From: Haliotis cracherodii
Taxonomy: Eukaryota
Reading direction: 5' to 3'
Length of the DNA: 64,000 nucleotides
NCBI RefSeq assembly: GCF_022045235.1
Contig: NW_027266273.1
Location: 3,286,001-3,350,000 of the forward strand
Shown: piece after piece, positions 1 to 49,455 of the stretch
How positions within the stretch are numbered: position 1 is the first letter of the stretch
Layout: the number at the start of each line of letters is the position of its first letter
Notes under the pieces: model-generated
The model's input: only the letters and a program-made list of their open reading frames with translations
Told to the model about the DNA's origin: nothing
Database searches by the model: none
Position numbers and translations under genes: made by a program

Positions 1-632
1 ACATCACCTTCATGAACAGGTACACAGCTACCAGATAGTTCCCGTACCGCTTACCACAAAGAAGAGACAGCTTAGCCGACAGGATGTGTCTCAGTTGTAC
101 ACAACACGTATGCCTACTCTCCCTCTGGTTGTCCAAACACCTGTCAATATGCCTCACCACGTATTTTATAGTCCTTATTCTGATCTCCGGACTCTCATAC
201 TGGGCGTCACTGGCCAGACCTACAATCCTGTCAACGTTGATGCCAGACTGACCATTGAGGAGTCTCCATATAATACATGGGATGTAGAACATGAGTGCTT
301 GGATGAGGAGCACAACTGGTACCCACTGGTAGTAGGTGAGCTCTTTTTCTGTTCGCTTGTGATGCTCAACTGGGATGACTTCATTCATGGGGATGTAATA
401 TGTATTGGAGATCCAGCAGATGTTGTTCGCGTAGTCGACATGTGCCCCTGTGAACTGGGCCGGACACCAGCACCTGATTGGGTCGCCTACGTACTGTCGA
501 GCACTGACGACCACTGTGAAGATTATGAGTATTCCTGTTGTATATAGATGGTTCACGCGGTCAATCAGATCGTCATCATTGCGAACTTTTACGTTGGCAA
601 CTCGTCCTACAGACCCAATAATACTGTCCATC
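1..632 (-). CDS. inx: Innexin (gap-junction channel) constant coding exon, truncated by the window edge; 210 codons from the ATG at 631
   Basis: Manual minus-strand translation from 631: MDSIIGSVGRVANVKVRNDDDLIDRVNHLYTTGILIIFTVVVSARQYVGDPIRCWCPAQFTGAHVDYANNICWISNTYYIPMNEVIPVEHHKRTEKELTYYQWVPVVLLIQALMFYIPCIIWRLLNGQSGINVDRIV...CGKRYGNYLVAVYLFMKVM, with no stop. Innexin hallmarks: DDD-x-x-DR, QYVGDPI-x-C, C-W-x-x-NTY and the YYQWVP signature. Acceptor ttctcatctttgttacag|G ATG at 633/632. Paralogue identity not assignable. Confidence 0.97.
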
Positions 633-3016
633 CTGTAACAAAGATGAGAATACGTTAAAATATTGTGTCATTTATATAGTAATAGCCATCACAGTATTTG
701 CATCAAACACATCATAAATGCATACTGCATATTAAGACCACACATAGCTTAAGTCAGTTACATTTATTTAGAACAAATATGAAGACTTACGATGACACAT
801 ATCTGTATATGTGTCACATCGTATTACACGCATTTACATATTTATACACTGTACTCGACATGGTATGTAAGCGCGTGCGTATCGTCTTGTAGGATGGGTA
901 CACGGTACGTGTTTTCGTAGTTTGACGTCAAATGGACATACTCTGGCATGCGTCCAGTCAGGAGAATGAAACTTGACATAACTCAACTCGACGTCGTTTG
1001 TGATTGTATCGAATCCAAAATTATCAGCACCGTCATTCCACTCGTTGCCTTTGACAACGTGTGTTCGGGTCAACAATAAGGTACCAAACATCTGGAATTC
1101 ATTCTCGGTAGGAAATATTGACAGTGTTTTCCCGTGTGGTAAATAATCTTGGGGTTATATACGGGGAGGCAAAACAGTTTCGCGGGCAGGTGTTTAGTCT
1201 ATGATTTAGTTTCATATATACAGGTCACTAAATAGGTCAGATATCTATTTTAACCTTTGGCGTATGCTTGCGGTTATGAGATATTTCCATACATTCTTTT
1301 CCAGACCATGGTGTTGTTACGGTTTCTGAGTTCCTATAACGTTCGGACCACATGATTTGTTTAAGGAAGCTTAAAACATCTTTTTTATTGACGAATTCAC
1401 CTTTGAAGATTGTTCAATCAAAAATAAATGCAGCAAAACATGTATTAAGGACGCGAGATACTCGTAGCGGCAAATCCACTTTGGAATAACATGACAAACA
1501 CAACGCAATCAAGACAAAGGTAATTGCATTAAAGAGTCCCACGGTTCATATATAACTTATTTTACCAAACATTTCCATATTTCTGAAGATTTTAAAGCAA
1601 TGAGTAATGTCGTTCGGTAACAATCGGACAAAACAAACCGAGTTTCTCTACAGTTACTACGTGAGTTTCAGAGAAACACTGATCGATTGTGACAGTTATT
1701 GGATAGAGCATTCGCTCCAAACCGACAATCACAGGCGAGAATCATTGACTAACTCAGTTGTTTGGAGCGCTCTGAGCTAAAATAATAACGAACTAAGACA
1801 AGTCAGATAGGGTTATCTAGCAAACAGGTGCTCCACGTAGCAGAGACCTATGCAGAGTCCTCGGGGTGTTCAAATACCATCTTCTGAGGTCCCGTGCGAG
1901 GAGAAAGATCATGCCTTATGCCCTTTGCTATTGTAAATGTATAGGGTGTTTGGAGCTTCACGTGGCAGGTACAAATAGCATTATTGCTTTCATATGGTAA
2001 CTGACATTAGGTTGGGTGATAAAGAGAACCACTACATAAAATACTTCTTTAAGGACGAAACGTGTGAAAATCGTAACAGAGGGATGATAAGGGAATGAGA
2101 AGAATGATATATGAATATCGAACAAGTAATAATTCGAATGAAACACGTTCGGGGGAAGTTATCGAGAACCTGAACACTTCACATGTTGTAGAACCCACAC
2201 CAGGTAAACAAAAGCCAATTGAAACGACTCTGATAATTTCAAAATTGTGGTGTGTTTATGTATAAAACACGAGACCGTATCTTACTCTAAAGACAAATCT
2301 CGATAAGGCGCTTATACCTTCGAGGTGTTTTTACCGGAGGCGAAACTTTAGAACACGCGTGAAAACTATTTCCCAAGCTGGAGAACATCCTCATGGAGTC
2401 GGTCGACGGTAGCTGAAGGCTTTCTATTGCGAGGTATGAAGTAACGAGGAGGATCCCCATGCATGTCCAGACCAAGAGGTTTAGCGAGGAGATGACTCAT
2501 CGCCACGGGAGTGGAGCATGGCGCAATCCGCGATAACAAACGGAATATTACTAATACGTTTCCTATAATACACGTGAGGGGCCTGGTCAATGGATAACGT
2601 AGGTGTAATGAATGGAGCAACTGGGATAGGGTGTGTGGCATCATCGTTGGTACACCATACAAGGAAGGTATGATGAGTGATTAATACGCATAAACTATGC
2701 AAGCTAAGTAACAACAGTTGGGCGTGTTCTACGAATTTAGGAAACATTTTCCGAGCGTATGAACTGAGGTTAAATATTGAGTAAACAAATCATATCATTG
2801 TTAACGATTCACTAACATGCTATGATTTAAATGAATTACTATCAACAATAAACAAGAAACAAAATCCTTTTATGATAAATAAATAATATACCATGCATCT
2901 AGTAGATTAAGTCAAAACAATACAGAATACCATGAACGTTAAAACAGAAACAACAAATACAAAAGTAGGAACGAGAAAAAGAAGGAACAGCAAACGATGT
3001 GTGTGTTGACACTTAC

Positions 3017-3063
3017 CCTTTACAAAGAAAAGCTGATGCGAAACTTTGTATTCCCAAAATCAT
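3017..3063 (-). CDS. Candidate alternative first coding exon of the innexin: MILGIQSFASAFLCK(G)
   Basis: aatcATG (A at -3), in-frame stop just upstream, 15 codons + GG, then a consensus donor AGG|gtaagt. Phase 2 matches the acceptor at 632. Confidence 0.62.
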
Positions 3064-4027
3064 GATTCAATTTAAAGCATCCTATACACAACAAAAGTTC
3101 TCATCCAGAAACTATCGGTTAAAGTTACCTCGTGCCGCAATCCGTTTCTTAATATTTCAAAATCCACCAAGTTTACATACAGCCCCATAGCTAGGCTCTC
3201 ACACAAGGCAATATGGACGCGGGGAGATGCTAGAGTGCGAAACTGCGGAATGTAAAAAACGGATCCGAAACTGTGGCTTCATGCTGAGTAATATGTTCCG
3301 TATTAATTGTAGTGCTTTCTTTATATTCACCCACGTGTGGAAAGTGAAATATTGAGACTGATCTGACTCACGGTTTGAAGGACTGAACGCGAGATAAGGG
3401 AAGGGATTTATGCTCATCGCTCGCTGATAAAGAAGCCACTCAAATGCCACATAGTTATTTCAATACACGCTGATTCGGTGTATGTATGAGTAGAGCTTTT
3501 TCTGCCTTTTTCGATCAGTAAAGAAAGGCGCGCAAAAGATCATGATTGATAAAGCTTGTTATCACATTGTTCGCGATTCAATGGCGTTAACTCAACAGCA
3601 CAGTCACGCATTAAAACGTCAATATTTTGAAATCAGCATAAAGGATTGCTCACGGCTGTGACTGTGCCAGGAGCTCAGAGGGAGGCGTTCGCTAACATTT
3701 CATGTACATCACCCAACGTTTCTGCAACCATCGATGCAGTGCATGGAAACGTCAACATAAGGTTCGCGTTATTTCCATACGTGGATGCCACAACATCTCA
3801 TTACAACCACGGATTCCTCAAACACAACAGGGGATTTTGTATCCATTATATCCAACGCTTTCTTGCAGGGGCCACAATGGTAACAAGGCACTGAGCACTA
3901 AGGATTTCAGTTCAACAGTGCTTAAATGTAACGACACACGGACAGATGGTTATCGTGAAGTCACGTGATGAAGTGAAGCATGCAGACAGAGATGGGGGAA
4001 TGGGGGAGGGGGTATAGGGGAAGAGAC

Positions 4028-4080
4028 AGAGTATCAGGATAGGTCAGTACCAGGATAGGTCAGTACCAGGATAGGTCAGC
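4028..4080 (+). repeat. 16-bp tandem repeat (cagtaccaggataggt) x~3
   Basis: Directly visible. Confidence 0.9.
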
Positions 4081-4432
4081 ATGCCAGACTAATGGATGTG
4101 TCATAGGAGAGGTGGGCTTGGAGTTTGCAGGCAAATGCATGTCTGTGTATGCATGCATGCAATGTTTAAAACGTGCTGGTATGTCAAATAACTGTTGTCA
4201 GTTTACATCCCTGTTCCTTTGATAGATTATTTACAGGCCTCTGTCATATACCTGGAATATTTTTGCGGCGTCAAACAATATCCACTCAATCATTTGGGTA
4301 TACTGTAGTAATATCGGGTGTTCTATAAAGTACGTCTTGAGTGGTACATCTCTGGTCATGAGAATATAGAACTTTGTTGCTTCGTTTTAACGTTAAACAA
4401 ACATAATTCCTGTCCTATTCAACACAGAATCA

Positions 4433-4584
4433 GGGGCGGTGGGAGAGCCAAGTGACTAAAGCGTTCGCTCGTCACGCCGAAGACCCGTGTTCGATTCCCC
4501 ACAATGTTTGAAGCCCATTTTCACCGTTCCTCTGCCGTGATATTGCTGGAATATTGCTAAAACAGGCGTAAAACCATACTCACT
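4433..4584 (+). mobile_element. tRNA-derived SINE, family A (~165 bp, (ACTC)n tail)
   Basis: A/B-box-like head (gttcgattccc) and shared body/tail with the copies at 16897, 21729, 27239, 58734 and 62047. Confidence 0.85.
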
Positions 4585-4756
4585 TAACACTGGATAAACG
4601 TTTTCTCTTTTTTGTTCAATACAGTTATAATCTGCCTGAATTTGAAATTTCGTACTTGAGTTTTAAGAATATTTTTTACAAGATGTTTTTATGTATATCT
4701 ATCCAAACGGAACTTGCAAGGTGAGACATTATTACCACATCACAAACTAATCTTAC

Positions 4757-4773
4757 CGCATATTTGCTATCAT
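4757..4773 (-). CDS. Candidate alternative first coding exon: MIANM(R)
   Basis: ATG ATA GCA AAT ATG CG|gtaaga; phase 2; in-frame stop upstream. Confidence 0.42.
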
Positions 4774-5939
4774 TCGTCAGTGATCTATTTACGAATACCG
4801 ATATCTCCTTTCAAGCAGTCTTTTACGAAACGTCACAATATCTCATCTCATGTGAAACCGACTCTTCCAAAACGCGTATATTTAAAGACAACATCCTTTG
4901 CCTGGTCCAAAGAAAACTAAGATTGTTCTCTTGGGACACCACAAAACAACCAAGAACATTAGGCACTAAACAAGGACCGCCATTTAATGTCCTAATTACG
5001 TCCTATCTGAACGTTGCACGTGCAACGACTGCAATAAAGCAATGCAAATAAATTACAAAACACGAATCGAGGGGACAGGACAGTTGAATATATTCCCAAG
5101 GAATTGATTTTATGACAAAGGACTGTTGTGCATCGCTTGCATCCTTGGGGTTACCGTGTTAGAAACACCGAATAGAAGTATTAATAATGTAGTGCAATGA
5201 GCATTCACTTGCTGAATGGTATTTGGCGCATTAAAAACGCACTTATTATTACAAACTAAGAGTTTATATAATTGGGGTGTTAAGGTGACCTTATATTTCT
5301 ATTGTATTGCCTTTTGTTTGTATACTGGTGCCGTATTGTCTGCCGGTCGTACTATGACTTTGTGATCGAAACTGTGCCGTAAAAATAGGATATTGGTCGA
5401 GAGAACAAAAGATGTATCGAGACGATGGAGAGACATGCCAATTATAAATTAAACGGCATATCAATCATTTATTCTCGTCATCAAAATGGATTTAAGTGAA
5501 AAACATTATGAAAATGCGAAAAAGTAATCCCCACCCAGAAATATTCTCATATTTATTGATGCGAACGTGATGATATTTGGAATGGCATATTGATATTGAC
5601 ACAAACCTGGCATGTTATTAAAAAAAAGAATTATGTCGGTGAACCTGACATTATCGTAATTAAGGTAAGCCAGGACAATAGTGTTATCAATTACTTACAC
5701 GTTTTTTTTTGTTGGAATAGACGTATTCCACAATTATACCAATGATGAGCCTGGTCACTGGCGATTGACACCTTTCCAATCATATCAATTTCAAAGCCCT
5801 TGGTTATTGATAATGCAATGACATTAATAATACAACTATAATAGTAGTATGGCATTATTCACGCGTCATTTAACTGACCTAACAACGACAATACCACAGT
5901 CTTAATGAGTATCGATGGGTTCTCTTGATTAACCAGGGC

Positions 5940-6140
5940 CACGGAGACCCAATGGTCTTAGGCGGAGCAACTCGCTGACAGGAGTTGCGTCCCTTTGCCA
6001 TGTCAAGACCCCTGGTTTCGAAGATTCGTCTCGATGGCGACCCCTTGACTGTTATACCCATGGGTTTCACTGAAGTGTCCTTTGCCTACGACCTGTGACA
6101 CCATGGACTTTCCGCCCAATGTAAGCTGACACGACCTAAC
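5940..6140 (+). mobile_element. Degenerate SINE family D
   Basis: Shares gagttgcgtccctt, gggtttcactgaagtg and aagctgacacg with 38251-38523. Confidence 0.6.
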
Positions 6141-6144
6141 ACCG

Positions 6145-6460
6145 ATTTAGTTTAGTGGATAGTGTCTGCCCCGAGAGGCGAAGGTCGGTGTTTAGATCCC
6201 CTGGCCACGTCATACAAAAGGACGTTTACATCTGGTACTTAATGTCACCCTGTCTGTCTCTTGTCATTAAGGAGATAAAACAAGGACTGAGTGGGGTATC
6301 AAAGATAAACTGCAGTATGGTATCTCATCTGGCTGACACTGTCAAACCGGCATAAGTCCGGACAGAAGAAGAAGCCACACAAACGCACTCACACACGCAC
6401 CCGGCACGTCAATATATATGCAATAGTCTTGAAGGCGCGACGTTAACTCATTTCGCATCA
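6145..6460 (+). mobile_element. Degenerate SINE family B
   Basis: Similar to 6541-6902 in the opposite orientation. Confidence 0.75.
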
Positions 6461-6540
6461 ACTGCCCGCACGCTTTAAAAACTGTTCAAATTATACCCCT
6501 CACTCACTTTCAAACACTAACAAATCAACCCTCAGTGACG

Positions 6541-6902
6541 TGAGGTGAAGGTGAAGTGAAATGGGGTTTCACGTCGCGTCCAAGATTATTGCACTTATAT
6601 AGCGACGTGCATGTACGTGTGCGTGTTTGTGTAGCTGCTTGTACTAGTCCGGACTGATGCCGATTTATAGTTGCTAGCTCAGTGAGATAGCATGCCGCAG
6701 TTTAACATGAATACCCCACTCAGACACAGTATACTGACTCCGAGCCGACCAGTCCTTGTTTTAACCCCTTAATGCCGAGCGCCAGACAGGATAACAACAA
6801 GTACCATCTTTTAACGTCTTTTGGTATGACGCGGTCGGGGATCGAACCCCGGACCTTCCGCTCTCCGGGGGGACGGTCTACTACTAGACCACGGAGGCGG
6901 TC
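6541..6902 (-). mobile_element. Full-length tRNA-derived SINE family B (MetaSINE-like body, (CACCT)n tail)
   Basis: tRNA-like head gaccgcctccgtggtctagt...ggttcgatccc; 12-bp TSD ccctcagtgacg (6529-6540 / 6903-6914). Superfamily name is from recollection, not a search. Confidence 0.92.
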
Positions 6903-7978
6903 CCCTCAGTGACGCATCCACTCAGTTATAATACAACAGTGACACTGAGTAGGGTCAACTGGCGGATTAACTGCAGTCAATAAAGCTCACGGATCGGCCT
7001 CAAGGTAAAGGAGATGTAAACATGCCGTCATACAACAGAGCAAGCACAGAAAGGATTGCAACAAGTTGTTAATTTGACATCAATGACGGGGCAATGATCA
7101 TAATCGTAAACTCAGGCCGATAACGTCATGTGCAGAGGACAATCAGATTTCTGCTTCAATAATCTTGTTCGTAATTAGGGTCAATTATTCATCCTGTTTT
7201 TGAACGAATCGACGTGATTATTTGCTTGTGCTTGACTTCTCTACAACGCTATGCGTAATGCAGGTAATAAATAACAAAGCCATTTGTCAAATTGTCAGCG
7301 TATCAATCTATATCCTATTAAGCACTTGAATGTACACTTGCTATGGTGCTATTTACATATGAAAAGCAAGATAATTAACATATAAGACGTCATTGGGGAA
7401 CGAAACGAACACCAACGTTTGTTATTGCATGAAGAGTGTATTTCAGACTATTGGAATGGCATGGAGGTAACCTGACGCCCTTGATGTTTATAATACGGAA
7501 ATGTATAAAAACGCAAAGACTAAAAAGGTGTCATTGTCGCATACATTAGTATTGGAAAATGATTACTAAGTTTAATAATATCGATATGGTGGGATCTCGT
7601 GTAAAAATGTATACTGGAATACGAAACCTAATTAGGGTTACCAATATACGAGTATACTAAAAAATCATTTTGTGATTTAAAATTATGAACAGTCATATCA
7701 TGAGAAAGTGAAATGTGACGTGATTGTGACGTGAACAGGTAGTCATAGATGTATCCATAAATGTACATCTTGTGCCAGTTATTATGTAATACAAAACTTC
7801 CGAAGCAATACATCTACAATCTATACACAGTGTTGCGAGCTCAGACAGGTCAAATGACAAGTTGTAGAAAAAAAGCGGAGATATTACCTATGGATGGAGA
7901 CTTGCAAGCCATGGAGAAAGACCCAGGGTATGCGAACATGCGATTATGGCGGCAAACACATATACTTCCAGCACCTAC

Positions 7979-8052
7979 ACAGATGACGTTGAACAAAACT
8001 CCACTGAAGATACTTTTTTCCAAACGGTTAAGTACTTCTTAGCTGCTACCAT
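7979..8052 (-). CDS. Candidate alternative first coding exon: MVAAKKYLTVWKKVSSVEFCSTSS(V), with a possible longer start at 8136
   Basis: acgATGG strong Kozak context, 24 codons + GT|gtaggt, phase 2. Lies in a CpG-rich, repeat-free block (~7900-8750). Confidence 0.45.
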
Positions 8053-9475
8053 CGTTACCCCCGACCCCTCGGGCCCATTACGCACCCCCCTCCACCCTCG
8101 GACTTTGGGGTGTGTGGAGTGTGTGTACTGGCTCATTCGTACATTTGCATATGGGAAACAATAAGCCCGATGCCACTATACTTCGGATATCGGACAGCCG
8201 CCTGCTTCGCCAGATACCTAACGGCGGTCGCCTAGCAACCAGAATTGGGGATCCAGATTTAGCAAAGAGTTCATTCCAGGCAGATGTTTTTTTCGGGGTA
8301 GGAAGACTTACACTGTATATCCCAGCGCGCTGCATGTCGGTCTTAGTAAGCGCTATACGGTGCATGCTGGTGCCGAAACGCAACGTCTCTTGGGTGAGAC
8401 ATTTTTTCCCATTCCATGACGTCATTCGTAAACAACACTACGTAGGAAGTTAGACCATATCACTGACACACCCAACACCGGGGAAACACTGGAACCGTTG
8501 TCCCAGTAAATAAACACAAACACTTGGCTTATATTTCAGATAATCTCAACATGTGATAAAATCGCTCTTCAACGTGTTGACCACATCGCCCAGGCCACGC
8601 TGATAACGACGGTCGACGCCACCTTATAAGGTGAAAACCACGCAAGCGAAAAGAGTGATAAGGACAGATGCCGAGATGAATGAGATCCATATCCACAAGG
8701 AAATCTGTGGAGGCGGCAAAGCACTTTAATTACTGACCAATATCTAGGGTCGCATTAGAAACAGAAAATGAAAATGTATCACGCGATCATATAGGAAATG
8801 ACTCAACACCCACCCTCTCACTCTCACTTCAAAATTCACAAGACGTATGTTCGAAAACGACGAAAGTGATTGATACAATTGACCTGACTGTTATATGATT
8901 AATTCATGACTCAGTTAAACGATTTCAGCCTTTGGAGAAAAGGGAATATGTGGATAGGGATCTGCACCTCCTGTGCAATATTGCAGCTATACATATATAT
9001 CATTCACCTTGTGAACCCACTATAATCGAACCAGATAATAATAAATAACGAGAGACCATACTACCAACCGAGCTACCCCATGCCATGGTAACTTACAAAG
9101 CGATTAAATATCATTCTATCAATTTCGATGTATTCATTTTCGCAGTAAATATTAAATTTTGAATTTCATTTAAATTAAATATGGTATCATTATATTGCAT
9201 ACAAATAATAAAAATATCCATATTTGAGGCGAGGAAAATAATTCTTTTCACTCTTTTTGGAACTTCCGATGGATTGGTTTGGTAAGAGCTGGTGGGTGCG
9301 TGCACACATCACATACTGGCACCGGTTCGTTTTCCCACTTATGCCAACAATTTGGAATATGCTTCCCGGCATATGCTGTATAGTTCCTGACAGACCCATT
9401 GCTGAAACTGACATAATTCTGCATTTCTTCAGACCCCTGGGCAACCCGTGCCTAATACGATCTTCTCCTCGCCAA

Positions 9476-9481
9476 CCCCCC

Positions 9482-9512
<31 letters not shown>

Positions 9513-9553
9513 CCCACACCCCTCAACACACACACACACACACACACACCACC
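9476..9553 (+). repeat. Poly-C run and (CA)n microsatellite
   Basis: Directly visible. Confidence 0.95.
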
Positions 9554-12500
9554 ACCTCAGCCTCGACCCTTCATACACACACTCCAAAATACACCATACA
9601 TTACGACCTGTCACAAGGCCAGCTGAATCTATTCTTCAAGTCTCAGCATGATTGAGCATCTTCCTCAAGGAACACATCAGAGACCTTTGCCAAGCGATGC
9701 ATTAAGTCCAGTCAGAAAACAGTTTAACCCCAGTTACAAATGTCTATCTGTCCTGATCCCCAACACGCGACCCTCTCTACAACCAGGCACCCCTACATGT
9801 TCACGCCCAACACAATAGCACACCGGAGCCATCATACAATGGGATGTAATGTCCACGTCAAAAGGTTAGGTAAATACACAACGCTGGTAACTTATTCAGC
9901 TTACGAAGACCCGTCTACCTAACGCTGAACATATGCCATCTTCACGATCTCAAGCCCAGTGGTTGTTGTGATTACTGGATTCTGTTTCCCTAGAAACTAG
10001 TTAAAACGGCATCTAGGGCCTCTGGTGCACATCTGCGTATGCGATGGTAGCACCTGTCTTGTGGCTATTAATGTGTTTATGTGATAAAATTTTGGTAAAA
10101 ACAGCAGTTACGTCAACAGTGAATTTATTTAGTTTATATATCTTTCACTGAAAATGTTTCGGCGAAGGGTGTTGTCAGTGCAAGACCAGTAAACATGGTT
10201 AAATTGTTTTGTGAAAGCAGCAATCAGTTAAAGATCATGATGAGAAAATGGTTTGGGGAGATACAATCTTACCGTTTACGAGTTAGTAATTAGCTTTCGG
10301 TGCCACGTGGTGACTGTGTCAGAAAGGTAAGAGATATTCAAAAGACGTTGATATTTGTATGATGAGTACATACAGTCACTGTGAAAACACCGTTTTTCAA
10401 TAAGTGTTAGCGATACCACAAGGTTCCAAGGTGTACGTGGACGGATATGTCTACATCACAATCATACAATTTGCTGATAAAATGTTTCGACCAGAGAATG
10501 GTAATAGGATACAACTGCTCAAATAATTATTCAACCACGAAGTTGGAAATTATAGAATCTGATTTGTTAGTCAGGTTTCAAATCTCAATAGCATGCCTCT
10601 GATTCAGGGAAGCACACACCATGAAACCTCTTTTACACGAGGTCCAAGGAATCATTTAGATGTTCGAGACAAGCAGAGTCCTGATATTAACGATAGTGCC
10701 GAAAGAGTTTCTGCTAGTCCTGCACCATGACCGAGGAATATATTTATTTTATGAAAAAAATATATCTAGAAACGCATACAAAAGTAAGTCTAGCCCGCTC
10801 AAGCTAGCTCTGTTCCACATCAGCATAGGGAATTTTTATTTTATTTTTAGAGTCAAGAGGGATATTGTGTAAAATAAGAATTAAGAGACTAAATGTTAGT
10901 CTAAGTTTCTGCGGGAACATAACGTTACATCGCCTTGAACGATATGTCGAGTTAGTGGTCTTGTTCGCGTTGACGAGGATCAGTTGTTTTCACCAGAAAG
11001 TACTATTTTCACCAACCCAGGCTGTAGAGGCTGCAAATAACTGGTATATTGCTGATCATTCTTTACCACTTCGACTCAGGAATAACTTTTCAAACACCTG
11101 GTGCTATCAGTATCTTGACAGTGTTATCCCAAATCTTCAAGAATGGGTTTATTAGTCTGTGTTACACAGTAGTACTAAGTCAACTTTGACAAATATGACG
11201 TCGTTGATCTAATTCTTACAAGAGCATTCTCCTCACGGGGCCTAGTGACATAGTTTAGTTATGCATCTTTTCCGGGAGGCATCCCCCCCCCCCCCCGTGA
11301 GTTGACGCTCAACGGATTGCGGAAATCCGATCACCTCCTCCCAATAGGTAATAACCGTTAATTGAACACCTGTCAAAAGCCAGCCGTTTATCTGACCACT
11401 CCACCTGGTGGAAGAATCCGGTCTATTACCGCTACCACCAATACGATAATGGCATTATCTGTTAAAGAAAGTAGATTATTCCCAATTGGGGCGGGTTTTA
11501 GACAGGTAACAGCCCGCATTGTGAATAGCAAAAGATGATGACCGAAGCAGATGACTGCACGAAGTTGATGAGGGTTCCCGTTACTGTGTATCAATTTGGA
11601 TGATCTGAACGACAAAGCAGCAAGTTCAACCTTCCTGTTCCACAAAGCCGACGAACACGTGCACACATCATGAATTGTCTGCTCTTACAGCAGAAACGTT
11701 GCCTCTTATCAGATGATACTCAAAGTAATGTGACGTCTTAATGTACTGAAATGTCAGGATAATGAATACTCAGATTATACGATACGGTTCTGGAGATATG
11801 ATACCGGACATATGATACCCAGGGAGGTGTGCGGAACAAGGCCAATGGTATGATCCTTGATCAAGGGATTTAAAGGTTTGTTCGTGCACATATAATCGGT
11901 CACCACATTGTTTTGGCTGAGTTCGCAGAACAAATACGTTATCCGTGACAATTACATTGACAAATGAACCATCACGAATCCAAAACTCATTTAAATATGT
12001 TCGGGACAAAGATCTGTACAGGTCAGCAAACACTGGCATGTCAATCGATTAAATGCCACCCTCTTTTCGCCTTACAAGAGCATATTTTACATTGATTTAC
12101 CGTTAGCGATTTTCTGCATTGCGCCCTTCACTGCAGCTTGATTATCGAACCCTAGAATTATCCAGATTTCTGTTTTCTCCCATTACTGTATCAATATCAA
12201 TAACCATGACAGTCCATTTAAAAAACAAACACACATTGACAATAGACTGAGGTTCATGCGTCGTGTCACTAATTCAAAATGACACCTAATCGCGTTTGTA
12301 TACTACATGAAATTGCTCAGTAACAAAAATCGGACGTGGAGCTATTACGATGTATTACCAGTGATCCCAAAAATATCACTATACCAATGGGAGATTAAAT
12401 CTAGGTCCAAGGCAATACAAAACAGACACACCGGTACAAGCTTTCCACGGGCGGCCAATTTCCCATTAGACAGAATTATCAGGTTATTGTTGAAACTCGT

Positions 12501-24342: not shown

Positions 24343-24386
24343 CTGTACTGTGAAGTACTTAAATCGTTGTTAATGGAACCATTCAT
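24343..24386 (-). CDS. Candidate alternative first coding exon: MNGSINNDLSTSQY(R); frame also open back to ATGs at 24515/24518
   Basis: agaATG, 14 codons + AG, consensus donor CAG|gtaagt, phase 2. Confidence 0.5.
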
Positions 24387-24954
24387 TCTCTTATAACGAA
24401 CCACAGAAACATAGAAAGGTACCAACTTGTAACAGCGAATCCAAATTGACTTATTGAGTTTTAATTGATTACCATTTATGAAAGGTATTCTGAAGAAACA
24501 TGTTTTATTTATCATCATATTTATAGGGATGGGTTATTTCTAGTCATCAGTGTAACGTTCACGTTTGAAATGATATCATGTTACAAATCCCAGATTTAGG
24601 TCTTTAAATTATTTATATATGAAACCACATTGGCGTCAGTTCTTTTCAAATTCCACGGAAAAAACTAAACATTAATGTCAGTTTCGGAGGTTATCTAAAA
24701 TATTTATACAGCCTCTAGAAACACGGAGCCACTTGACATATATAAAAAAGAATTTCATCACATTCGTATTTTGAAAACGTCAGAGATATTTAAATGGGTT
24801 GCCAATGAAATGTCAATTATAGCGGTTGAATGTAAAATTACAATAACAATATCGTTACTTTTGAACTTAAGAGATTTTGTAGTTAAATCAATTCTAATGC
24901 TATTAAAATGGTTTAATTTGGAAATTCGTGAAATGTAGTTTTTGTAAAACTTAC

Positions 24955-24968
24955 CAGTTATACGTCAT
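24955..24968 (-). CDS. Candidate alternative first coding exon: MTYN(W)
   Basis: ATG ACG TAT AAC TG|gtaagt, phase 2. Overlapped by an out-of-frame uORF (ATG ATG GAT GAC GTA TAA), so it may be effectively a 5'UTR exon. Confidence 0.42.
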
Positions 24969-26006
24969 CCATCATTCGCGTCTTCAGCGTTATTCTACTT
25001 CTTCACTTTAACCAAAGGGATAAAACACATTGTTTATCCATTTGTTCTTTCATAGCAATTGCTTGTTCACATGCATTTAAGAAACTTTAATATGTATACA
25101 CATGCGCTTGATTAGCCTGTGTCTTCAAGTGGGATCACCTCATCTCTAGGCTACCACATTGTATTCTAGTATATAAGAGTCTGCGTTTCCTCTCAGAAGA
25201 TCAAACGGGATGTTTGTAAACTTTTATATCATCTTTGGACTTAAGTCCCAAAGGACACACAGATTTCATTCTGAAGTAATTTCCTTCGGCTTTTTAAAGT
25301 TCTTTTTTCTTCGCCAAATGAAACCTGTAACCTATCAAAGTCCATCCATACTCTTGTAATCTGTCTGATAATAGTTTTGTTTACATGCAATTCGCATTAA
25401 CTCCAAGGTTGGATAATTTCTTCATTTATAACCTAGTGCTCCTCCCAAGAGCCTGTTTACACGGTGAGGCCAGGACCCTGTACTCTCGACCACCCCCCAC
25501 CCCCTCCCGGCCGATGCACTTGAGTCAAACAGGCAGGCACGCGAGTTTGTAGTTGTTCAACGTCTGAAAATTTACAGGAATGTAACTTGAGGCGCACGAA
25601 CATCGAGGCGCGAGGCATTTGGGCCATTTCACAGAGGATGTTATGATCTAAATATAGCAGGGGGTATTGACGTCATCAACAACTAAACCAAGGGGGTCTG
25701 GGGTTTCTATCCTGTAAACTTGGTCTGGCGCCTACCATCAGAAACAATGAAAAAAAGTGTACGTTTTCCTCAGAATATATGATCTCTTTTTCTTTTCAAC
25801 AACAATGATCAGACTTATCAAAAGGAAGTTGACTCTTACAGGTTAACTCGTGATAATGGAATTTCAATATGGTATGTAAGTATGAAAAAATAAACAATAC
25901 GGCGTTCTAAAAGGGATACATCTTGTATCTTGTATTAGGTAGCTCGCTTCTCGCATTGTCATCGCACGTGTCATGCTGAGTCGAACAGGTATAAATCAAT
26001 ACCTAC

Positions 26007-26032
26007 CACCAAATCTGAGAAGTCCAGACCAT
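26007..26032 (-). CDS. Candidate alternative first coding exon: MVWTSQIW(W)
   Basis: caaaATGG strong Kozak context, 8 codons + TG|gtaggt, phase 2. Directly downstream of a CpG-rich and polypyrimidine promoter-like block. Confidence 0.58.
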
Positions 26033-26099
26033 TTTGAATTCTTTTCCGTAATACTTGGAACCAGCTCCAAAAGAAGTCAAAATTGGCACAAACTCCAAC

Positions 26100-26510
26100 T
26101 TAAGATAATACACGAAGTCCATCCCATATTCCACGTAAAGGAGACACTACGGGCGTCCGTAGACAAGACACCAATGGACACTGACAATGGCCGTTCGATC
26201 GCTGTCACGTTAACGCAGGCTGGACACGGCCAGAGTTCTAGAATCGCCACTGAAAAATCAAAGCTCGGAAGGTTTCGTCGATTTACCGCCTCAGCTGCGC
26301 GGAGTGATACGGCAAGGCGCAGGTCTTCGACTCTTGGCCTGAGAGGGGGAGCGGGGAGGAGGAATATGGAAGGGAGGGAGTTGTGGCGATGGAGGGAATG
26401 TGGGCAGCGTTGGAAGAGAGGAGGGGACTGACTAAATCCAAGTCTCGATCGATCGATTTGACAGTCGCATCACGATCTCTGCCCATCACAATTTACTCTC
26501 GCGAAACGAA
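26100..26510 (-). promoter_or_regulatory. Putative promoter/5'UTR of the 26007-26032 exon
   Basis: Local GC/CpG enrichment and a CT-rich tract on the minus strand (26340-26430); no repeats recognised. Confidence 0.4.
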
Positions 26511-31698: not shown

Positions 31699-31727
31699 AG
31701 GTGTAGGCAATCTGCTCGTTCCATCAT
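31699..31727 (-). CDS. Candidate alternative first coding exon: MMERADCLH(L)
   Basis: ataATG ATG G..., 9 codons + CT|gtaagt, phase 2. Confidence 0.33.
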
Positions 31728-33041: not shown

Positions 33042-33067
33042 TCTATGGTATTCCCTTTTTCCGACAT
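33042..33067 (-). CDS. Candidate alternative first coding exon: MSEKGNTI(E)
   Basis: actATG with an in-frame stop upstream, 8 codons + GA|gtatgt, phase 2. Confidence 0.3.
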
Positions 33068-34263: not shown

Positions 34264-34445
34264 GGCGAGGGACCCCCTCCACTGTCATGTGCCGACGGCG
34301 TTGACGAGTGTGACGTCAAATGAATTGTATGCTCCAAACGTTCCCCAATCTCAGACCCTCTCCGTAGACTAGCCCTTGACGATGGCGCTGCTCCAGTTGC
34401 CGATGATGCTGCTATTTCGCCAAAAAATCTGACCATGGACGGCAT
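34264..34445 (-). CDS. Candidate alternative first coding exon: MPSMVRFFGEIAASSATGAAPSSRASLRRGSEIGERLEHTIHLTSHSSTPSAHDSGGGPS(P)
   Basis: Perfect gccaccATG context, 60 codons + CC|gtgagt, phase 2. The ORF-track stop is the TGA inside the donor. GC-rich. Confidence 0.68.
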
Positions 34446-36367: not shown

Positions 36368-36541
36368 TAATATATAGGTATTCTGTCAACGAATCAATGT
36401 GCTTTCAAATTGCATAAGCCCTTCCTGGGAAGTACACACCTCGACTGTTTGGCTTTACAAATATTGTCATTCACATCCTACCGGGTACCCATTATGTTGG
36501 TGGGATAGGATTAACTTGTATAAGAGCCCTTTATCTACATT

Positions 36542-38250: not shown

Positions 38251-38523
38251 CGGGTGACCCAGTTGTCTAAGGCGTCGTGATTAGCTGTGCAGAGTTGCGT
38301 CCCTTAGACACGACAGAAACCTATGATTGTGGGTTCGAATCCCGGTTCGCCCCGATTATGTTTCTAGGTTTGTTAGCACCATACCCATGCTCGTGGGTTT
38401 CACTGAAGTGGTAAACATCTGAGACCTGCATCACTTCGGGCTCTCCTCCAACATTAAGCTGACACGCCGTGATATAACTGGAATACTGTTAATAACGACG
38501 TTAAACCCAACTCACTCACTCAC
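38251..38523 (+). mobile_element. Full-length SINE family D (tRNA-Leu-like head with long A-B box spacing, (ACTC)n tail)
   Basis: gtctaaggcg...gtgggttcgaatccc head; further decayed copies near 28240, 39600, 52790, 55790, 61240 and 62262. Confidence 0.85.
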
Positions 38524-44449: not shown

Positions 44450-44820
44450 AACCCAACGGAACTATTTTTACTGACCTCATATAGTGACCCCAACTGTTGC
44501 TCTTCCATGCCATCCTGCACAAACGTTAGCCACTGCATGTAGTTTGCAGACACGGTAATGGCAGCTTCTTTGGACAGAATGTAACCCCAGCCAGTCTTAG
44601 GTCGAAATTCTATCTTCTATGGACAACCAGTTACATTAACTAGTCTACTCGACCTTGCGCCAGACATAGGCCAACTGGACCCCACCTTCAAACGTAACTC
44701 ACACAGGCGTGCTATCAAGCTCGCGGCTACTTAAAGAAACCCCTGGCCACTTAAACTTGACATAAAGATCCAGATTGACCTACGCCTTCCAAGGGACTAT
44801 GTTCTCACTTATGGATTATA
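44450..44820 (+). mobile_element. Possible decayed tyrosine-recombinase (DIRS-like) fragment
   Basis: LDP....SH.RR-like and IKIQ.D-like remnants; heavily disrupted. Confidence 0.25.
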
Positions 44821-47094
44821 TTGGTAAATGAAATTGCAACTATGGAAGCCATTTGTAAGTTAGGATCTGTCATCATCCTAGACAAATGTTAACGTTAATT
44901 TGGGAGGTTAAAACATTGTATCAATCAAGATAAATGAACTTGTATTGGGAAACACGGACCAAGCTTGTGCTTGCTAACGAAACAATTTCCGGGAGGAATG
45001 TGGGTAAAGAGGTTTTTTTGGCAAGGGTCCTAGACAAAGCACACCCACCGTGCCCACTTACATGTACATATGGCTGGGCCAAGACAACGTGTTTTAAGAC
45101 TATTAGAAAAACAGAGGAAGTCGATCATTTTGGTGTGAACTTGAATGAGCCTGGACATCTTACTGATAGACTAGCATTTGCAGTTCAAAAACTCTCAGCC
45201 ATGATATGCTTTTGATCCGGCGTCATGGTGTCGCAGCGTCATCCTCGACGTATATTTTATAAAAGGATATTATGTCCAAAATTCCTGTTTCATCGCCCGT
45301 CCCCAAATTTTATCTTGAACGTAATTCTTCATTGACTGTTTTGATTGCTTACTATGATAAATTCAGAATAGTGTTCTGGCGAATTCCTAGTTTCTTTTGA
45401 ATTCAAGAAAATCATATTGGTTATCAAAATAATGATATTCATAAAAAATAAAATCATTTCAACCGATAAATATCTTTAAACAAAATAGTGGAAAAAGCAA
45501 TATTATTCATTATAGTAAAAATTGTCTTCAGTATTTATGAGCTCTTTGAAAAAGGTCAATGAATAATTGTTTGTCCTCGGAATAAGAAGAGGAAGTAAAA
45601 CAGATAAATTCATGTCTCAGATTTCTTTTCTCATCGTCAGAGATAAACCCGAATACTCTCTGACAGCTGCGTTTCAGGAGAAACGCGTAGATAATAGCAA
45701 TGAAAGAATTAGGGCGCATTAATGCCGATAGTCGATTTGCAAAATTGGTTATTGTGGTATTAAGTAGCCACGGAAGTAATATCTAAAGAACAAACAGTCA
45801 CGAAGATTACAAAGGCGGTAGGCAAAGACGACTTAATGAAAGCCATGCACAGTCTTCTTGGACAGAATAGACGTTAATGCAAAGCAATAGTTCGATTGAA
45901 GTCTCTCCTGACTTGAACACAACAGAAAATGTCAGAGCAAAACGATGCAATTTGTATACATATGCAACTACTTTGATATTGCAGACATGAACATAGTGTG
46001 CATTTCACCTATTGAGAGTGAGTGAGTGAGTGAGTCCGGTTTTATGACCCTTTAACCACAAGGCCAGTTCACCGACATTTCACCCATGAAATATGATATG
46101 TTCTAGATGTGTTTGCTATCTTTAACTGTCGATTCAAAAGAAAAACAATATGGGTATAAACGAATTCAGTTTACAGCATAACCAAAGATTTTGACTGGGC
46201 AAATATGCTTCTCATCGTTTGATAGTCTAGGGATAATCTGATATTTATGCCATTCAAGAACTATAACCTTTTCGCGGAGACCTGGTATCATCGGTATTTG
46301 GTAATGATTCATAACACCATATTTATGATATAGTCGGACTCGAACAATGGAGTTGTATCAAGATTGTGGTCAGTTTTGTCGCTTGTATTAATATCATTAA
46401 GATTACTTATGCAAGGAACCATTTAACAAGGCGACCTATCTTGTCCCTGTATTAAAGCTAACATCACTTACGTGACATAAAAAAGTGTCAGTTCTTAAGA
46501 TGAGAGATGCATGTAATATGAACCGTGTTTTATTGATAAAAATGAAGATATTATTTAAAAAGGGAAAATCAAAATATATCCAAACAGAAGCTCCCCACGG
46601 ATACTTTGACGCTTTATGTATTTGGAATCCATTAGACGTTCTAGCACAGATAAATTGGCCAAGCTGGTGTCTGCCAGCTGCGCAAAACTGCAAACTTCAA
46701 TAACGTCATTGGTCCTGATTCGTTGTGCGTCGGGTTACCCTAAGATATGTGGTCAGTTTAGTGTCCAGTGTCCAGCTGGCCATAATAGGTTTGCAACAGT
46801 CGCGGATCTGATATTGCCACCACGGGCAACTGGGGAATTATTTCAACCAGATCCTTGTAATACACCAGAAGCGTATCAGGCAATCAAGGCTGCATGACTG
46901 TTTCGTGAACTGATATCAGGTGTAAGAAGAGTGGAATTAGTTTGCTCGCATTATTAGAAACGTATGAAAACAACATGTTGAACTTTGTTTCTGCGGCTCT
47001 GTATAGGACAGCCAAATTCTGTCGTAATGTAAGTCACTACACGTACCATTTCATCTCTTGACAGCTGTACACTCGTATGTTGTCAGTAACAATA

Positions 47095-47340
47095 CTCCTG
47101 GTGGAGAATAGGTCTTCAGCAACAAAAGGTTGCCGCAAGAGTCGACCATGCTTGCCGTAAGAGGCGACTAACTGGATCGGGTGGTCAAGCGAGCTGACTT
47201 AATTATCGTATCCTAATTGCGGAGGACAATGCTCACAGTGTCAATCATTGGATTGTGTGGTCCAGACTCGATGATTAACAGACGACTCTCAAATTGCTGA
47301 AATGTTGCTGAGTGCGGCGTTAAACAACAAACAAACAGAA
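47095..47340 (+). mobile_element. SINE-like family C
   Basis: gaataggtcttcag...taagaggcgactaa...ggtccagactcga...gagtgcggcgttaaacaacaaac. Confidence 0.85.
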
Positions 47341-49321
47341 ACAATACATTCATCTCCTCATCTGCTTATGCAAACGGGTCGTCCATGTTGACGCTGTCTG
47401 TCTCTTGTATATGTGGCACACTACAGTATATCCGTTCAAAGTATCCTAACTAAAACAATCGTTATCAATAGTAATAATGATCTCTCTTAATAATAATGAT
47501 GGAAATATGTTGCTCCCTTGTCGTGAAAGATGAAGCCATCAATATCAGCTTAAGTGACATGTACAAATATTTTCCATTGGTTGTATTTACTTAAGATATC
47601 GATACTAACAGTTTTATGTATCTGTTTTGTCTTGTTTCATCCCCGCATAGAAGAACGGTCACACCCATTTCATGTTTATGTCAACGATGATCCGATGCTT
47701 AACTGTGTCATCGTGGTTTTGTGTCCCTGGGCACTTCTCGGATGTGGCGTTGCTGATGGTTACAGAAACAAGGGTGTGTTTTCTTTGAGACGTACCTCGC
47801 ATTAACGTCAATCTAAGTAATGCATTTCAGAGATTTAAGGAAATATATAAACAGACATCCAGTGGTAAGTTCGATGGTCTCATGTGACGTGCATTAAGAT
47901 TAATATGGGCCAGCCTCAGTCCTGTATTGCTTTAAGAGTTCCAAACGAATCTTAATTCTAAAACTCCATTAGCAATAGGGTTATACATTAATGAATAAAA
48001 AGAAGTAGATGGCTAGAAACACGAACATTGATTGACAGAGAGGTTTTCTACGTAATATAATAAGATGCTTTATCGATTCTATCATTTGTAAACAAGTGAA
48101 TTAAAAATTAATTACCCGCTGTCTCCTTTACAATTTCAGATTCACATTCAAGCATCATTAACGTGTATTTTTGCAACGAGGTGAAGAAACAATACCAAAA
48201 GAATTGAAGGTTTGAAAGTAATGATTATTTTTTAGTTTGTTGACTGTTTGAGGTTATCGATTATATGTCTGAAGTCATAATGTACAGGAACGGTTTATTT
48301 AAATTAGCGCCATGAGAATTTGTTGAATCCTATAACTTCAACAATGCACACGAACGGGATTGATTACCGACAAGCGTGTTTACCAATAGCATAGGCGACC
48401 CATGAACATTTTCTTCATGGATCGTGGCTGTAACACAGTCATTAGGTTCCAGGAATGCACCGAATGGCGTACTCATTATATTCTAAAATAGAACCAAGAA
48501 CATTTATCTCTGCAGTTATTTTTGCAAACTTGGATTTGTACGATTATAAACGACCACGCGTTGTACTGTGGATCCAGTGATATTTATATTGGTATCAGTA
48601 AGGTATAAAACGTATTGAGCTTCCTTATCGAACTTGTCTCCTACATGTAGAAATCTTTTGTTCAGTTTAATCATGTCATGTCATTAGTCGTTACAATATC
48701 GGCTGTGTTGTTGTCACCATGGCAACAAAATTAATAATGTTTGGGTTTGGCTTATTGTCGTATAGATAACCTCACAGAGCGACTTAAGGCATTCGATAGT
48801 TGGCATCAGATACAACACTAAAGAGACATTATATTTAGTTACAGTTTATTATTATTGTAAGCAAGACGACGTAAGTTTAATCAGCTTGTTAGATAAGAAG
48901 GTGTAAGTAATGTAATAAGAAATCTGAGCATCAAACACTTTAGAAGAAGATGATTAAAGGATTCCAATGGACTACCCAATCAAGACAGAAGCTACATACA
49001 CAAACAATTCCATAGACGAAGTATTGGGACGCCAATGGGACTGATTCTACACATTTAATTAATTCCTATTAATTTCTTTGATAGCCAGACTTAACAAATC
49101 TAGTGCACAACGACATGCAAAGATTGTATAAGGAACTATTTGATAACTTGACATCAATCAAAGCTAAGATGTTACAGCATCAAAAAACTTCTGTAACTAA
49201 GCTGAAGCCTAAGGTCATATATACTGTCTGCACTACCCACATTGAAAGACTATATCATTAAGATGAAAGGATGTGCTTAACGAAAGGTCTTTTATATGTA
49301 GACAACTTAAAATGAGCTAAC

Positions 49322-49455
49322 CTGACCAGTGGTCCCAGACCCGAAGACTCCAAATCCATGTCCATATAATGAGGGTTGTGACTTCTGTCATTACCACCGT
49401 CCAAAAAATGCACCATTGCAATCTCCACCCCAGAACGTCTTCGTCCTTTCGCCAT
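49322..49455 (-). CDS. Candidate distal alternative first coding exon: MAKGRRRSGVEIAMVHFLDGGNDRSHNPHYMDMDLESSGLGPLV(R)
   Basis: gtcATGG strong Kozak context, 44 codons + AG, donor CAG|gttagc, phase 2. Composition drops to AT-rich immediately after the donor. Could belong to a different gene. Confidence 0.5.

What the first reader, a model, noticed from the sequence alone, without database searches (positions are those of the whole stretch)
1..49455. Innexin with a ~49-kb array of variable first exons, each donating a different N-terminal peptide to one constant channel exon
Seen: the innexin exon opens ag|G-ATG (phase 2). Upstream on the same strand are about ten ATG-initiated segments ending at GT donors in exactly that phase: 3017 MILGIQSFASAFLCKG; 4757 MIANMR; 7979 MVAAKKY...SSV; 24343 MNGSINNDLSTSQYR; 24955 MTYNW; 26007 MVWTSQIWW; 31699 MMERADCLHL; 33042 MSEKGNTIE; 34264 a 61-aa Ser-rich peptide; 49322 a 45-aa MAKGRRRS peptide. 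Several have strong Kozak contexts and CpG-rich, repeat-free upstream blocks. All three G|gtaagt donors I found outside SINEs carry an in-frame ATG. Established: innexin N-termini line the pore funnel and influence gating; Drosophila ShakB and C. elegans UNC-7 have N-terminally different isoforms; variable-first-exon/constant-region architecture is known from clustered protocadherins and UGT1A. Inference: promoter choice generates a repertoire of electrical-synapse subunits, potentially a cell-type code for gating, rectification or trafficking, on a larger scale than the few-isoform cases I know. Caveat: a random donor has an in-frame ATG roughly one time in four, so the weaker candidates may be chance.
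Basis: partly seen in the sequence, partly recalled or inferred. Interest (0 to 1): 0.92.

Follow-up and report, generated by a model that had tools for sequence, protein, structure and literature searches.

The report
Innexin gene with many alternative 5' exons
A mollusc gap-junction (innexin) gene keeps its whole 404-residue protein in one exon and splices at least eight different upstream exons onto it; two of these add ancient, conserved N-terminal peptides, much as in the worm gene unc-7.

Summary

- **Constant exon.** The minus-strand innexin exon opens ag|G ATG at 632/631 and carries the whole 404-aa protein.
- **Isoforms.** Public annotation of this genome and close relatives holds 15 listed isoforms with an identical core. 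They differ only in the peptide before MDSIIG.
Four of the ten (donors 3017, 7979, 26007, 34264) match those isoforms. Transcriptome contigs from two runs show the 3017-to-632 junction directly. The other six have no support.
- **Chance level.** "ATG plus in-phase donor" is not above chance: about 30% of donor-like GTs pass it in any phase or strand.
- **Missed exons.** One form uses an 18-nt internal micro-exon, so not all variable exons are first exons.
- **Conservation.** The 61-aa exon, with RRxS motifs, is conserved from gastropods to bivalves, and the 9-aa MVWTSQIWW exon probably is too. Others differ between close relatives while the core is identical, so they look unconstrained.
- **Paralogue.** A paralogue shares the intron position but has Leu instead of Met there.

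The closest known case is C. elegans unc-7, with six N-terminal groups. I found no paper describing this molluscan case.

The parts
1..632 (-). Constant exon: one leader base (G at 632), then the core start codon at 631-629 and the first 210 codons. The 404-codon reading frame continues without an intron past the window start (L001:917-2131:-).
   Evidence: Pfam Innexin E 1.8e-48. RNA contigs cover 1-632 in four runs and end or branch at 632.
633..650 (-). Shared acceptor (tctcatctttgttacag|G). The upstream exon supplies the first two bases of the codon that the G at 632 completes.
   Evidence: Read directly. The 631->3016 joint has GT..AG ends on the minus strand. The paralogue has the same position and phase.
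2318..2394 (-). Alternative 5' exon giving a 26-aa extension (MRMFSS...TPRR); donor AAG|GTATAA.
   Evidence: Exact match to P0001, an isoform annotated on this genome's own contig. No junction was seen in the four runs laid. Single copy in the genome.
3017..3281 (-). Alternative 5' exon giving a 16-aa extension (MILGIQSFASAFLCKG; ATG at 3063); donor AGG|GTAAGT. The exon reaches at least to 3281.
   Evidence: Matches P0123. The 3017->632 junction is present in RNA contigs of runs X1 and X2, and one contig covers 3016-3281.
7979..8136 (-). Alternative 5' exon giving a 25-aa extension (ATG at 8052) or a 53-aa one (ATG at 8136), MVAAKKY...SSV; donor TGT|GTAGGT.
   Evidence: Matches P0127 and P0128. 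A relative's version differs at 3 of 25 residues (P0132).
26007..26122 (-). Alternative 5' exon. Its last 9 codons give MVWTSQIWW (ATG at 26032); a 39-aa form starts at 26122. Donor GTG|GTAGGT.
   Evidence: Matches P0133 and P0129. Resembles bivalve MLWSHGHYW/MLWSHGHFW. The pattern M-[LIVM]-W-x5-W plus an in-phase donor occurs once in 134 kb, here, against 0.045 expected.
34264..34445 (-). Alternative 5' exon giving a conserved 61-aa Ser-rich extension with RRxS motifs. The start context is gccaccATGc; donor GCC|GTGAGT.
   Evidence: Matches P0121. Aligned with Patella, Babylonia, Crassostrea, Argopecten and Potamilus isoforms and with Batillaria. Upstream G+C is 0.54.
4757..4773 (-).
   Evidence: The sequence features are present. 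No matching isoform. No RNA depth at 4601-4800 in four runs.
24343..24518 (-). It has the best donor in the span, CAG|GTAAGT.
   Evidence: No matching isoform. RNA not tested, because it lies outside the one stretch allowed.
24955..24968 (-).
   Evidence: No matching isoform.
31699..31727 (-).
   Evidence: No matching isoform.
33042..33067 (-).
   Evidence: No matching isoform.
49322..49455 (-).
   Evidence: No matching isoform.

Best explanation
This is the 5' region of a molluscan innexin gene (NCBI names its orthologues 'innexin unc-9'). The genome is probably an abalone's or a close relative's.

**Shown.**
- The complete 404-aa channel subunit, including its own start codon, lies in one exon.
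- Upstream, over at least 82 kb, lie at least eight alternative 5' exons.
- In annotated isoforms each is joined to the same acceptor one base before the core ATG, always leaving a split codon completed by that G.
- RNA contigs show one of these junctions directly.

**Inferred.** Choice of promoter or 5' exon decides the mRNA leader.
- If the leader has no in-frame ATG, translation starts at the core Met and gives the 404-aa form.
- If it has one, the subunit gains an N-terminal extension.

**Which extensions matter.**
- Two extensions are old and under selection, so they are true coding exons. One is a 61-aa Ser-rich peptide with tandem RRxS motifs. The other, probably, is a 9-aa M-V/L-W...W peptide.
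- A 4-aa form may also be old.
- The remaining peptides are lineage-specific and look unconstrained. They are most likely by-products of leaders that chiefly carry transcriptional or translational control.

**Likely function (inference only).** The innexin N-terminus lines the pore, and N-terminal length and charge set voltage gating and rectification in UNC-7. The conserved extensions therefore most likely tune gating, rectification or kinase regulation of gap junctions in particular cell types.
For: - **Single-exon coding sequence, acceptor and phase:**
- **Isoforms:** 15 listed isoforms share an identical core and differ only in what precedes MDSIIG.
- **Exon mapping:** each peptide maps to one contiguous stretch ending at an in-phase GT. 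Positions are 2318, 3017, 7979, 26007 and 34264 in the window, and 69946 and 80298 upstream. One further form needs two exons, 82292 plus 81622-81605.
- **RNA:**
  - The four runs give depth on the exon and almost none in the intron.
  - The 3017->632 joint is present in two runs.
  - The main contigs of X1 and X2 stop at 632. I read this as a branch in the assembly graph.
  - The contigs of X4 and X10 carry 302 and 262 further 5' bases that do not lie in 1-6000.
- **Deep conservation:** the 61-aa exon is conserved across distant molluscs. The MxW...W pattern is unique in 134 kb.
- **Paralogue:** it has the same intron position and phase but CTT (Leu) in place of ATG, and its first exon lies 63 kb upstream. 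An upstream exon must therefore supply the start codon there.
- **UNC-7 precedent:** PMC7455501, PMC2694797.
Against: - Only one junction was seen directly. The others rest on database gene models whose RNA support I could not inspect.
- No evidence shows that any extension is translated.
- Transcription start sites are unknown, so 'alternative promoters' is an inference.
- One variable unit is an internal micro-exon.
- The resemblance of MVWTSQIWW to the bivalve exon was noticed first and tested afterwards.
- The structure model was too poor (pLDDT 41) to say anything about the extension.
Confidence: 0.75

Rival explanations
1. Leaders only. All upstream exons are non-coding 5' UTR exons used for tissue-specific transcription. 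Translation always begins at the core ATG (631), and the annotated extensions are artefacts of annotation pipelines that take the longest open frame.
For: - The core ATG and MDSIIG are conserved in every orthologue.
- About 30% of arbitrary donor-ended stretches carry an in-frame ATG, so a few of about ten leaders would do so by chance.
- Several peptides vary between close relatives while the core is identical.
- In the oyster, three accession numbers are listed for one extension-free protein sequence. I read these as separate transcripts.
Against: - The 61-aa exon is conserved in sequence, frame and length class from gastropods to bivalves, and has a near-ideal start context.
- The paralogue has no ATG at the start of its constant exon.
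- Bivalves conserve MLWSHGHYW and MEFW across orders.
Confidence: 0.1
2. One reading: ten or more variable first exons, each with its own promoter. Each gives a functionally distinct N-terminus, forming a cell-type code for electrical synapses.
For: - About ten distinct N-termini are annotated in this genus. Oyster isoform numbers run up to X10 and Biomphalaria's up to X6.
- In UNC-7 the N-terminus does control gating (PMC7455501).
Against:
- Most of the peptides are not conserved.
- The exons are unrelated to each other.
- At least one is not a first exon.
- No expression map exists.
Confidence: 0.15
3. Mostly chance: apart from one true 5' exon, the ATG-plus-donor segments are coincidences of a long AT-rich intron.
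For: There is no phase-2 enrichment of ATG-donor pairs. This reading probably is correct for most of the six unsupported candidates.
Against: Eight mapped exon units correspond exactly to annotated isoforms. One junction is seen in RNA. Two are conserved across distant molluscs.
Confidence: 0.05

Closest known systems
C. elegans unc-7 (innexin) N-terminal isoforms
   Same: A conserved core initiation Met (M121, 'the conserved innexin initiation site') is preceded by alternative upstream exons and start sites. There are 10 isoforms in six N-terminal groups, and N-terminal length and charge set voltage dependence and rectification (PMC2694797, PMC7455501).
   Different: - Here the whole core is one exon, and every variant joins at a single acceptor one base before the core ATG.
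- The locus is larger: at least 82 kb, against more than 25 kb.
- The extension sequences are unrelated to those of UNC-7.
- No functional data exist for this gene.
Drosophila shaking-B (ShakB neural, neural+16, lethal)
   Same: Innexin isoforms with different N-termini sit on the two sides of a rectifying electrical synapse (as summarised in PMC7455501).
   Different: From my own knowledge, not tested here: the ShakB variants replace a larger part of the N-terminal region, rather than adding a peptide to an intact core.
Clustered protocadherin / UGT1A variable-first-exon loci
   Same: Many upstream exons are each spliced to a common downstream exon.
   Different: - Those variable exons are tandem duplicates that encode the main functional domain, each with its own promoter (my own knowledge, not tested here).
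- Here the exons share no similarity.
- They are 4-61 codons long.
- The constant exon is a complete protein with its own ATG.
- One unit is an internal micro-exon.
Paralogous innexin of the same genome (G000:C22, matches P0028, named Haliotis 'innexin unc-9-like')
   Same: One constant coding exon, the same intron position and phase (tttcag|G), a first exon 63 kb upstream, and variable N-termini across species.
   Different: The constant exon starts with Leu, not Met, so the N-terminal exon is obligatorily coding.
Vertebrate connexin genes (for example GJB1)
   Same: From my own knowledge, not tested here: the whole coding sequence is in one exon, with alternative non-coding first exons and promoters for tissue specificity.
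   Different: It is an unrelated protein family, and the connexin leaders do not add residues.

Membership tests
Innexin (Pfam PF00876) | Match to the family profile above the curated threshold | tested here: met
   165.9 bits against a cut-off of 25; E 1.8e-48; residues 20-210 match profile positions 1-169. The best homologues are all innexins.
Innexin (Pfam PF00876) | Hallmark motifs: YYQWV at the second membrane helix and paired cysteines in both extracellular loops | tested here: met
   Read in the translation: TYYQWVPVV; C..C in CWCPAQF...NNICW and in MCDFDIRQ...VQCVLPIN. All are invariant in the 18-sequence alignment.
Innexin genes with alternative N-terminal isoforms (unc-7 / shakB type) | Several upstream exons or start sites joined to a common core that keeps the conserved initiation Met | tested here: met
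   15 listed isoforms have an identical core. Their exons are mapped. One junction is seen in RNA.
Innexin genes with alternative N-terminal isoforms (unc-7 / shakB type) | N-terminal variants change channel gating or rectification | not testable with these tools
   This needs paired-oocyte or in vivo electrophysiology.
Innexin genes with alternative N-terminal isoforms (unc-7 / shakB type) | The extensions are translated | tested here: inconclusive
   Conservation argues for translation of the 61-aa exon and, less strongly, the 9-aa exon. There are no protein-level data. Other peptides vary between relatives.
Variable-first-exon / constant-region cluster (protocadherin, UGT1A type) | The variable exons are paralogous tandem duplicates | tested here: not met
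   No DNA or peptide similarity among nine annotated exon segments and the six candidates, flanks included.
Variable-first-exon / constant-region cluster (protocadherin, UGT1A type) | Each variable exon is a first exon with its own promoter | tested here: inconclusive
   The MGPGRHVW form needs an upstream exon plus an 18-nt internal micro-exon with its own acceptor. There are no start-site data. G+C is raised upstream of three exons only.
Variable-first-exon / constant-region cluster (protocadherin, UGT1A type) | Each variable exon is spliced directly to the common constant exon | tested here: met
   Each peptide is fused directly to MDSIIG in the annotated isoforms. The 3017->632 junction is seen in RNA contigs.

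The most novel reading that the evidence does not exclude
A set of at least three alternative N-terminal coding exons has been kept since before gastropods and bivalves split. They are a 61-aa RRxS-rich domain, a 9-aa MxW...W peptide and a 4-aa MEFW-like peptide. They sit in an innexin whose paralogue shares the same phase-2 intron. Choice among them per cell type would give electrically distinct hemichannels, with rectifying or kinase-gated behaviour like the UNC-7b 'ball'. Lineage-specific exons would add further variants.
Probability: 0.25. Interest if true: 0.7.

Novelty: new member of a known kind. Interest (0 to 1): 0.45.

Why it matters
Molluscan electrical synapses in Aplysia, Lymnaea and Helisoma are classic preparations, yet the molecular basis of their rectification and modulation is poorly known.

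This locus offers concrete, conserved candidates. One gene gives a 404-aa 'bare' subunit, a form with a 61-aa N-terminal domain carrying conserved basophilic-kinase motifs, and a form with a 9-aa Trp-rich cap. All three can be expressed and compared directly.

The case also carries a practical warning for annotation. The acceptor sits one base before the core ATG, so any leader with a chance in-frame ATG is reported as a new 'protein isoform'. Isoform counts for this gene family are therefore probably inflated.

Tried and rejected
- **My first reading was wrong.** I assumed all upstream exons were plain non-coding leaders and the ten candidates chance. The annotated isoforms and the conservation of the 61-aa exon overturned this.
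I could not fetch the orthologous loci of the relatives, and ATG, frame and donor conservation could be judged only from their protein isoforms.
- **Read laying** is capped at one call and 6,000 letters here.
  - Only 1-6000 was tested.
  - The loose-end table was filled by a SINE, so the 5' letters of the X4 and X10 contigs were not shown.
  - Donors beyond 6 kb remain untested in RNA.
- **Search with the 61-aa region alone** found only Batillaria, because the cluster representatives are mostly short isoforms. This blank says nothing about other phyla.
- **AlphaFold model of the 465-aa isoform:** mean pLDDT 41. It is unusable, and I draw no conclusion from it on disorder of the extension.
- **Pfam scans** of the extension peptides and of two plus-strand ORFs (9257-9655, 25973-26431) found nothing.
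- **CpG observed/expected as a promoter marker** does not discriminate.
- **A second cluster look-up** listed the same 15 members; two members remain unseen.
- **Literature searches** found no paper on this architecture in molluscs. The Limax paper reports four transcript variants of one innexin, but the passages I read do not say how they differ.
- **Joined exon models.** I built and searched none of my own.


Full report
**1. The constant exon**

On the minus strand the sequence reads ttgttacag|G ATG GAC AGT, with the acceptor at 632 and the ATG at 631-629. Translation from 631 gives MDSIIGSVGRVANVKVRNDDD... with no stop to the window start.

- It matches Pfam Innexin from residue 20 (E 1.8e-48).
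- The window is G000:C10:3286001-3350000 in a 1.18-Gb genome.
- In the flanking DNA the frame runs on to a stop, giving 404 aa (L001:917-2131:-). The whole protein, with its own start codon, is therefore one exon.

**2. The upstream exons are real, according to public annotation**

A homology search returned a 430-aa protein of this genome's own contig that is 100% identical to the 404-aa query, with 26 extra residues. Orthologues were named 'innexin unc-9 isoform X2/X3' in Patella, Physella, Magallana and Liolophura.

The 90% cluster holds 17 members from this genome (29.3-Mb contig) and close relatives (65.6-Mb and 2.3-Mb contigs). Fifteen are listed. All have an identical 404-aa core and differ only before MDSIIG:

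| Extension | Length (aa) |
|---|---|
| none | 0 |
| M | 1 |
| MVFM | 4 |
| MHRLLFR, or MAESV...LLFR | 7 or 21 |
| MGPGRHVW | 8 |
| MILGIQSFASAFLCKG | 16 |
| MVAAKKY...SSV | 25 or 53 |
| MRMFSS...PRR | 26 |
| MDFV...MVWTSQIWW | 39 |
| MPSMVRFF... | 61 |

**3. Mapping the exons**

Each peptide is encoded contiguously on the minus strand and ends at a GT donor that leaves two bases of a codon.

| Exon (window or extended coordinates) | Peptide | Donor |
|---|---|---|
| 2394-2318 | MRMFSS...PRR | AAG\|GTATAA |
| 3063-3017 | MILGIQSFASAFLCKG | AGG\|GTAAGT |
| 8136/8052-7979 | MVAAKKY...SSV | TGT\|GTAGGT |
| 26122/26032-26007 | ...MVWTSQIWW | GTG\|GTAGGT |
| 34445-34264 | 61-aa MPSMVRFF... | GCC\|GTGAGT |
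| L006:5946-5956 (70.0 kb from the window start) | MVFM | TAT\|GTAAGT |
| L011:6298-6365 (80.3 kb) | MAESV.../MHRLLFR | CAG\|GTAAAC |
| L011:7605-7622 (81.6 kb) | 18-nt micro-exon of MGPGRHVW | TTG\|GTGAGC |
| L011:8292-8296 (82.3 kb) | ATGGG, start of MGPGRHVW | ATGGG\|GTGAGT |

- Three forms were not in the window, so I fetched 70 kb further upstream and found them there.
- The 18-nt micro-exon has its own acceptor, ttttcttaccacag.
- The locus therefore spans at least 82 kb, not 49 kb. Not every variable unit is a first exon.

**4.

All ten are present as described.

- Four coincide with annotated isoforms: 3017, 7979, 26007 and 34264.
- Six do not: 4757, 24343, 24955, 31699, 33042 and 49322.

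- Of 1,328 donor-like GTs on the minus strand of the 134-kb extended region, 32% have a stop-free in-frame ATG in phase 2.
- The figures are 32% and 30% in the other two phases, and 26-33% on the plus strand.

**5. RNA evidence**

- The runs behave as transcriptomes. Word depth on 1-632 is 17-91, and it is zero over most of the intron.
- A joint 631->3016, with GT..AG ends on the minus strand, is present in X1 and X2, which come from the same study. A contig covers 3016-3281. Exon 3017 is thus spliced to 632.
- The junction contig's depth (12.5 and 8.2) is about 15% of the constant exon's (90.8 and 51.6). With due caution about contig depths, this suggests that other leaders dominate in those samples.
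- The 6.2-kb main contigs of X1 and X2 end exactly at 632-633. That is what a branching assembly graph would produce.
- In X4 and X10 the main contig continues for 302 and 262 bases 5' of the acceptor, and these bases do not lie within 1-6000.
- X4's alignment runs two bases into the intron's 'ag', so its leader ends in AG. This fits the 80.3-kb exon or the candidates 24343 and 49322, among others. It is an inference only.
- There is no depth at 4601-4800, so candidate 4757 has no support.
- No junction from 2318 was seen.

**6. Which extensions are coding?**

- **The 61-aa exon is clearly coding.**
  - It aligns with the N-termini of long isoforms from Patella, two Babylonia genes, Crassostrea gigas, Argopecten and Potamilus.
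  - The shared blocks are MPxMVRFFG, RRxS[LI]RR[GA]S and GExLExTIH[LV]TSxSSTPS. Batillaria matches at 79%.
  - Its start context is gccaccATGc.
- **The 9-aa MVWTSQIWW exon is probably coding.**
  - Bivalves of three orders share MLWSHGHYW, MLWSHGHFW or MLWAAHGHYW. MVWTSQIWW has the same length, with M1, W3, S/T4, an aromatic residue at position 8, and W9.
  - The pattern M-[LIVM]-W-x5-W followed by an in-phase donor occurs once in 134 kb, at this exon. The expectation is 0.045. This test was made after the resemblance was noticed.
- **The 4-aa form is only a possible relative.** MEFW or MDFW in bivalves, MEFLR in Patella and MVFM here may be related.
- **Other peptides look unconstrained.** Between close relatives with 0 of 404 core differences, MVAAKK... 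differs at 3 of 25 residues and MAESV... at 3 of 21. That is roughly what unconstrained sequence would show, though the samples are small.
- **The variable exons are unrelated to one another**.

**7. The paralogue**

P0028, which is 55% identical and named for Haliotis, matches this genome at 100% over residues 39-439 on contig C22. This suggests the genome is an abalone's or a near relative's.

- Its constant exon opens tttcag|G CTT GAC. That is the same intron position and phase, but with Leu where our gene has Met.
- Its first exon lies 63 kb upstream.
- Its N-termini also vary among species.
- The intron and the coding use of upstream exons are therefore old features of this innexin subfamily.

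**8. Comparison with what is known**

- C. elegans unc-7 has a 'conserved innexin initiation site' (M121) preceded by alternative exons (PMC2694797).
- It has 10 isoforms in six N-terminal groups, with 24 to 168 residues before the first membrane helix. These differ in voltage dependence.
- The UNC-7b N-terminus confers rectification by a proposed ball-and-receptor mechanism (PMC7455501).
- The present gene is a molluscan case of the same kind. It has a cleaner layout, with one acceptor and a complete core exon, and a larger locus.
- It is not a protocadherin/UGT1A-type array, because the exons are not duplicates of each other.
- I found no paper describing it. The isoforms themselves are already in public annotation.

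**9. Limits**

- Only 6 kb could be tested with reads.
- The structure model was poor.
- I built no joined exon models of my own, so the six unsupported candidates were not searched as spliced proteins.

**10. Verdict**

The real feature is a conserved alternative-5'-exon system with two or three truly coding N-terminal exons and several probably incidental ones.

Noticed in passing
G000:C22:1408725-1409927 (L015) and C22:1472921-1473049: A paralogous innexin (55% identical) has the same layout: one constant coding exon opening tttcag|G CTT GAC, with Leu instead of Met, and a coding first exon 63 kb upstream.
   Followed up: partly
window 4430-4590: A SINE-like repeat whose loose-end consensus starts GGGTAGCCTAGTGGT (tRNA-like head). 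Summed word depth is about 2-3 x 10^5 in all four transcriptome runs, with many chimeric joints. It swamped the loose-end table.
   Followed up: no
window 5710 and 2244: Contigs of runs X4 and X10, from two other organisms, join 5710 to 2244 in non-collinear order, with 22 unplaced letters between that are absent from the window. Both flanks are single-copy in this genome, and neither boundary has splice signals. It could be a rearrangement in those species or a circular or chimeric RNA; it remains unexplained.
   Followed up: partly
L011:7605-7622 (G000:C10:3367605-3367622): An 18-nt internal micro-exon with a good acceptor and a GTGAGC donor. With an upstream exon ending ATGGG|GTGAGT (L011:8292-8296), it encodes MGPGRHVW.
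   Followed up: partly
window 3196-3484: A low-depth contig of run X4, from another organism, matches with 0 differences over 289 bases. Neighbouring intronic contigs (2679-2836, 3618-3869) differ by about 4%. This may be a longer exon 3017 or a conserved promoter.
   Followed up: no
below window position 1 (L001, L014): The main mRNA contig is 6.2 kb from the acceptor, but the coding part is only 1.2 kb. This implies a 3' UTR of about 5 kb.
   Followed up: no
G000:C10:8.07-8.47 Mb and C11:5.6-6.9 Mb: Dense clusters of further innexin-like single-exon frames: more than 15 hits on C10, several on C11, some with stop codons.
   Followed up: no
window 63843-63975: A run of 133 N (gap or masked). 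I left it as it is.
   Followed up: no
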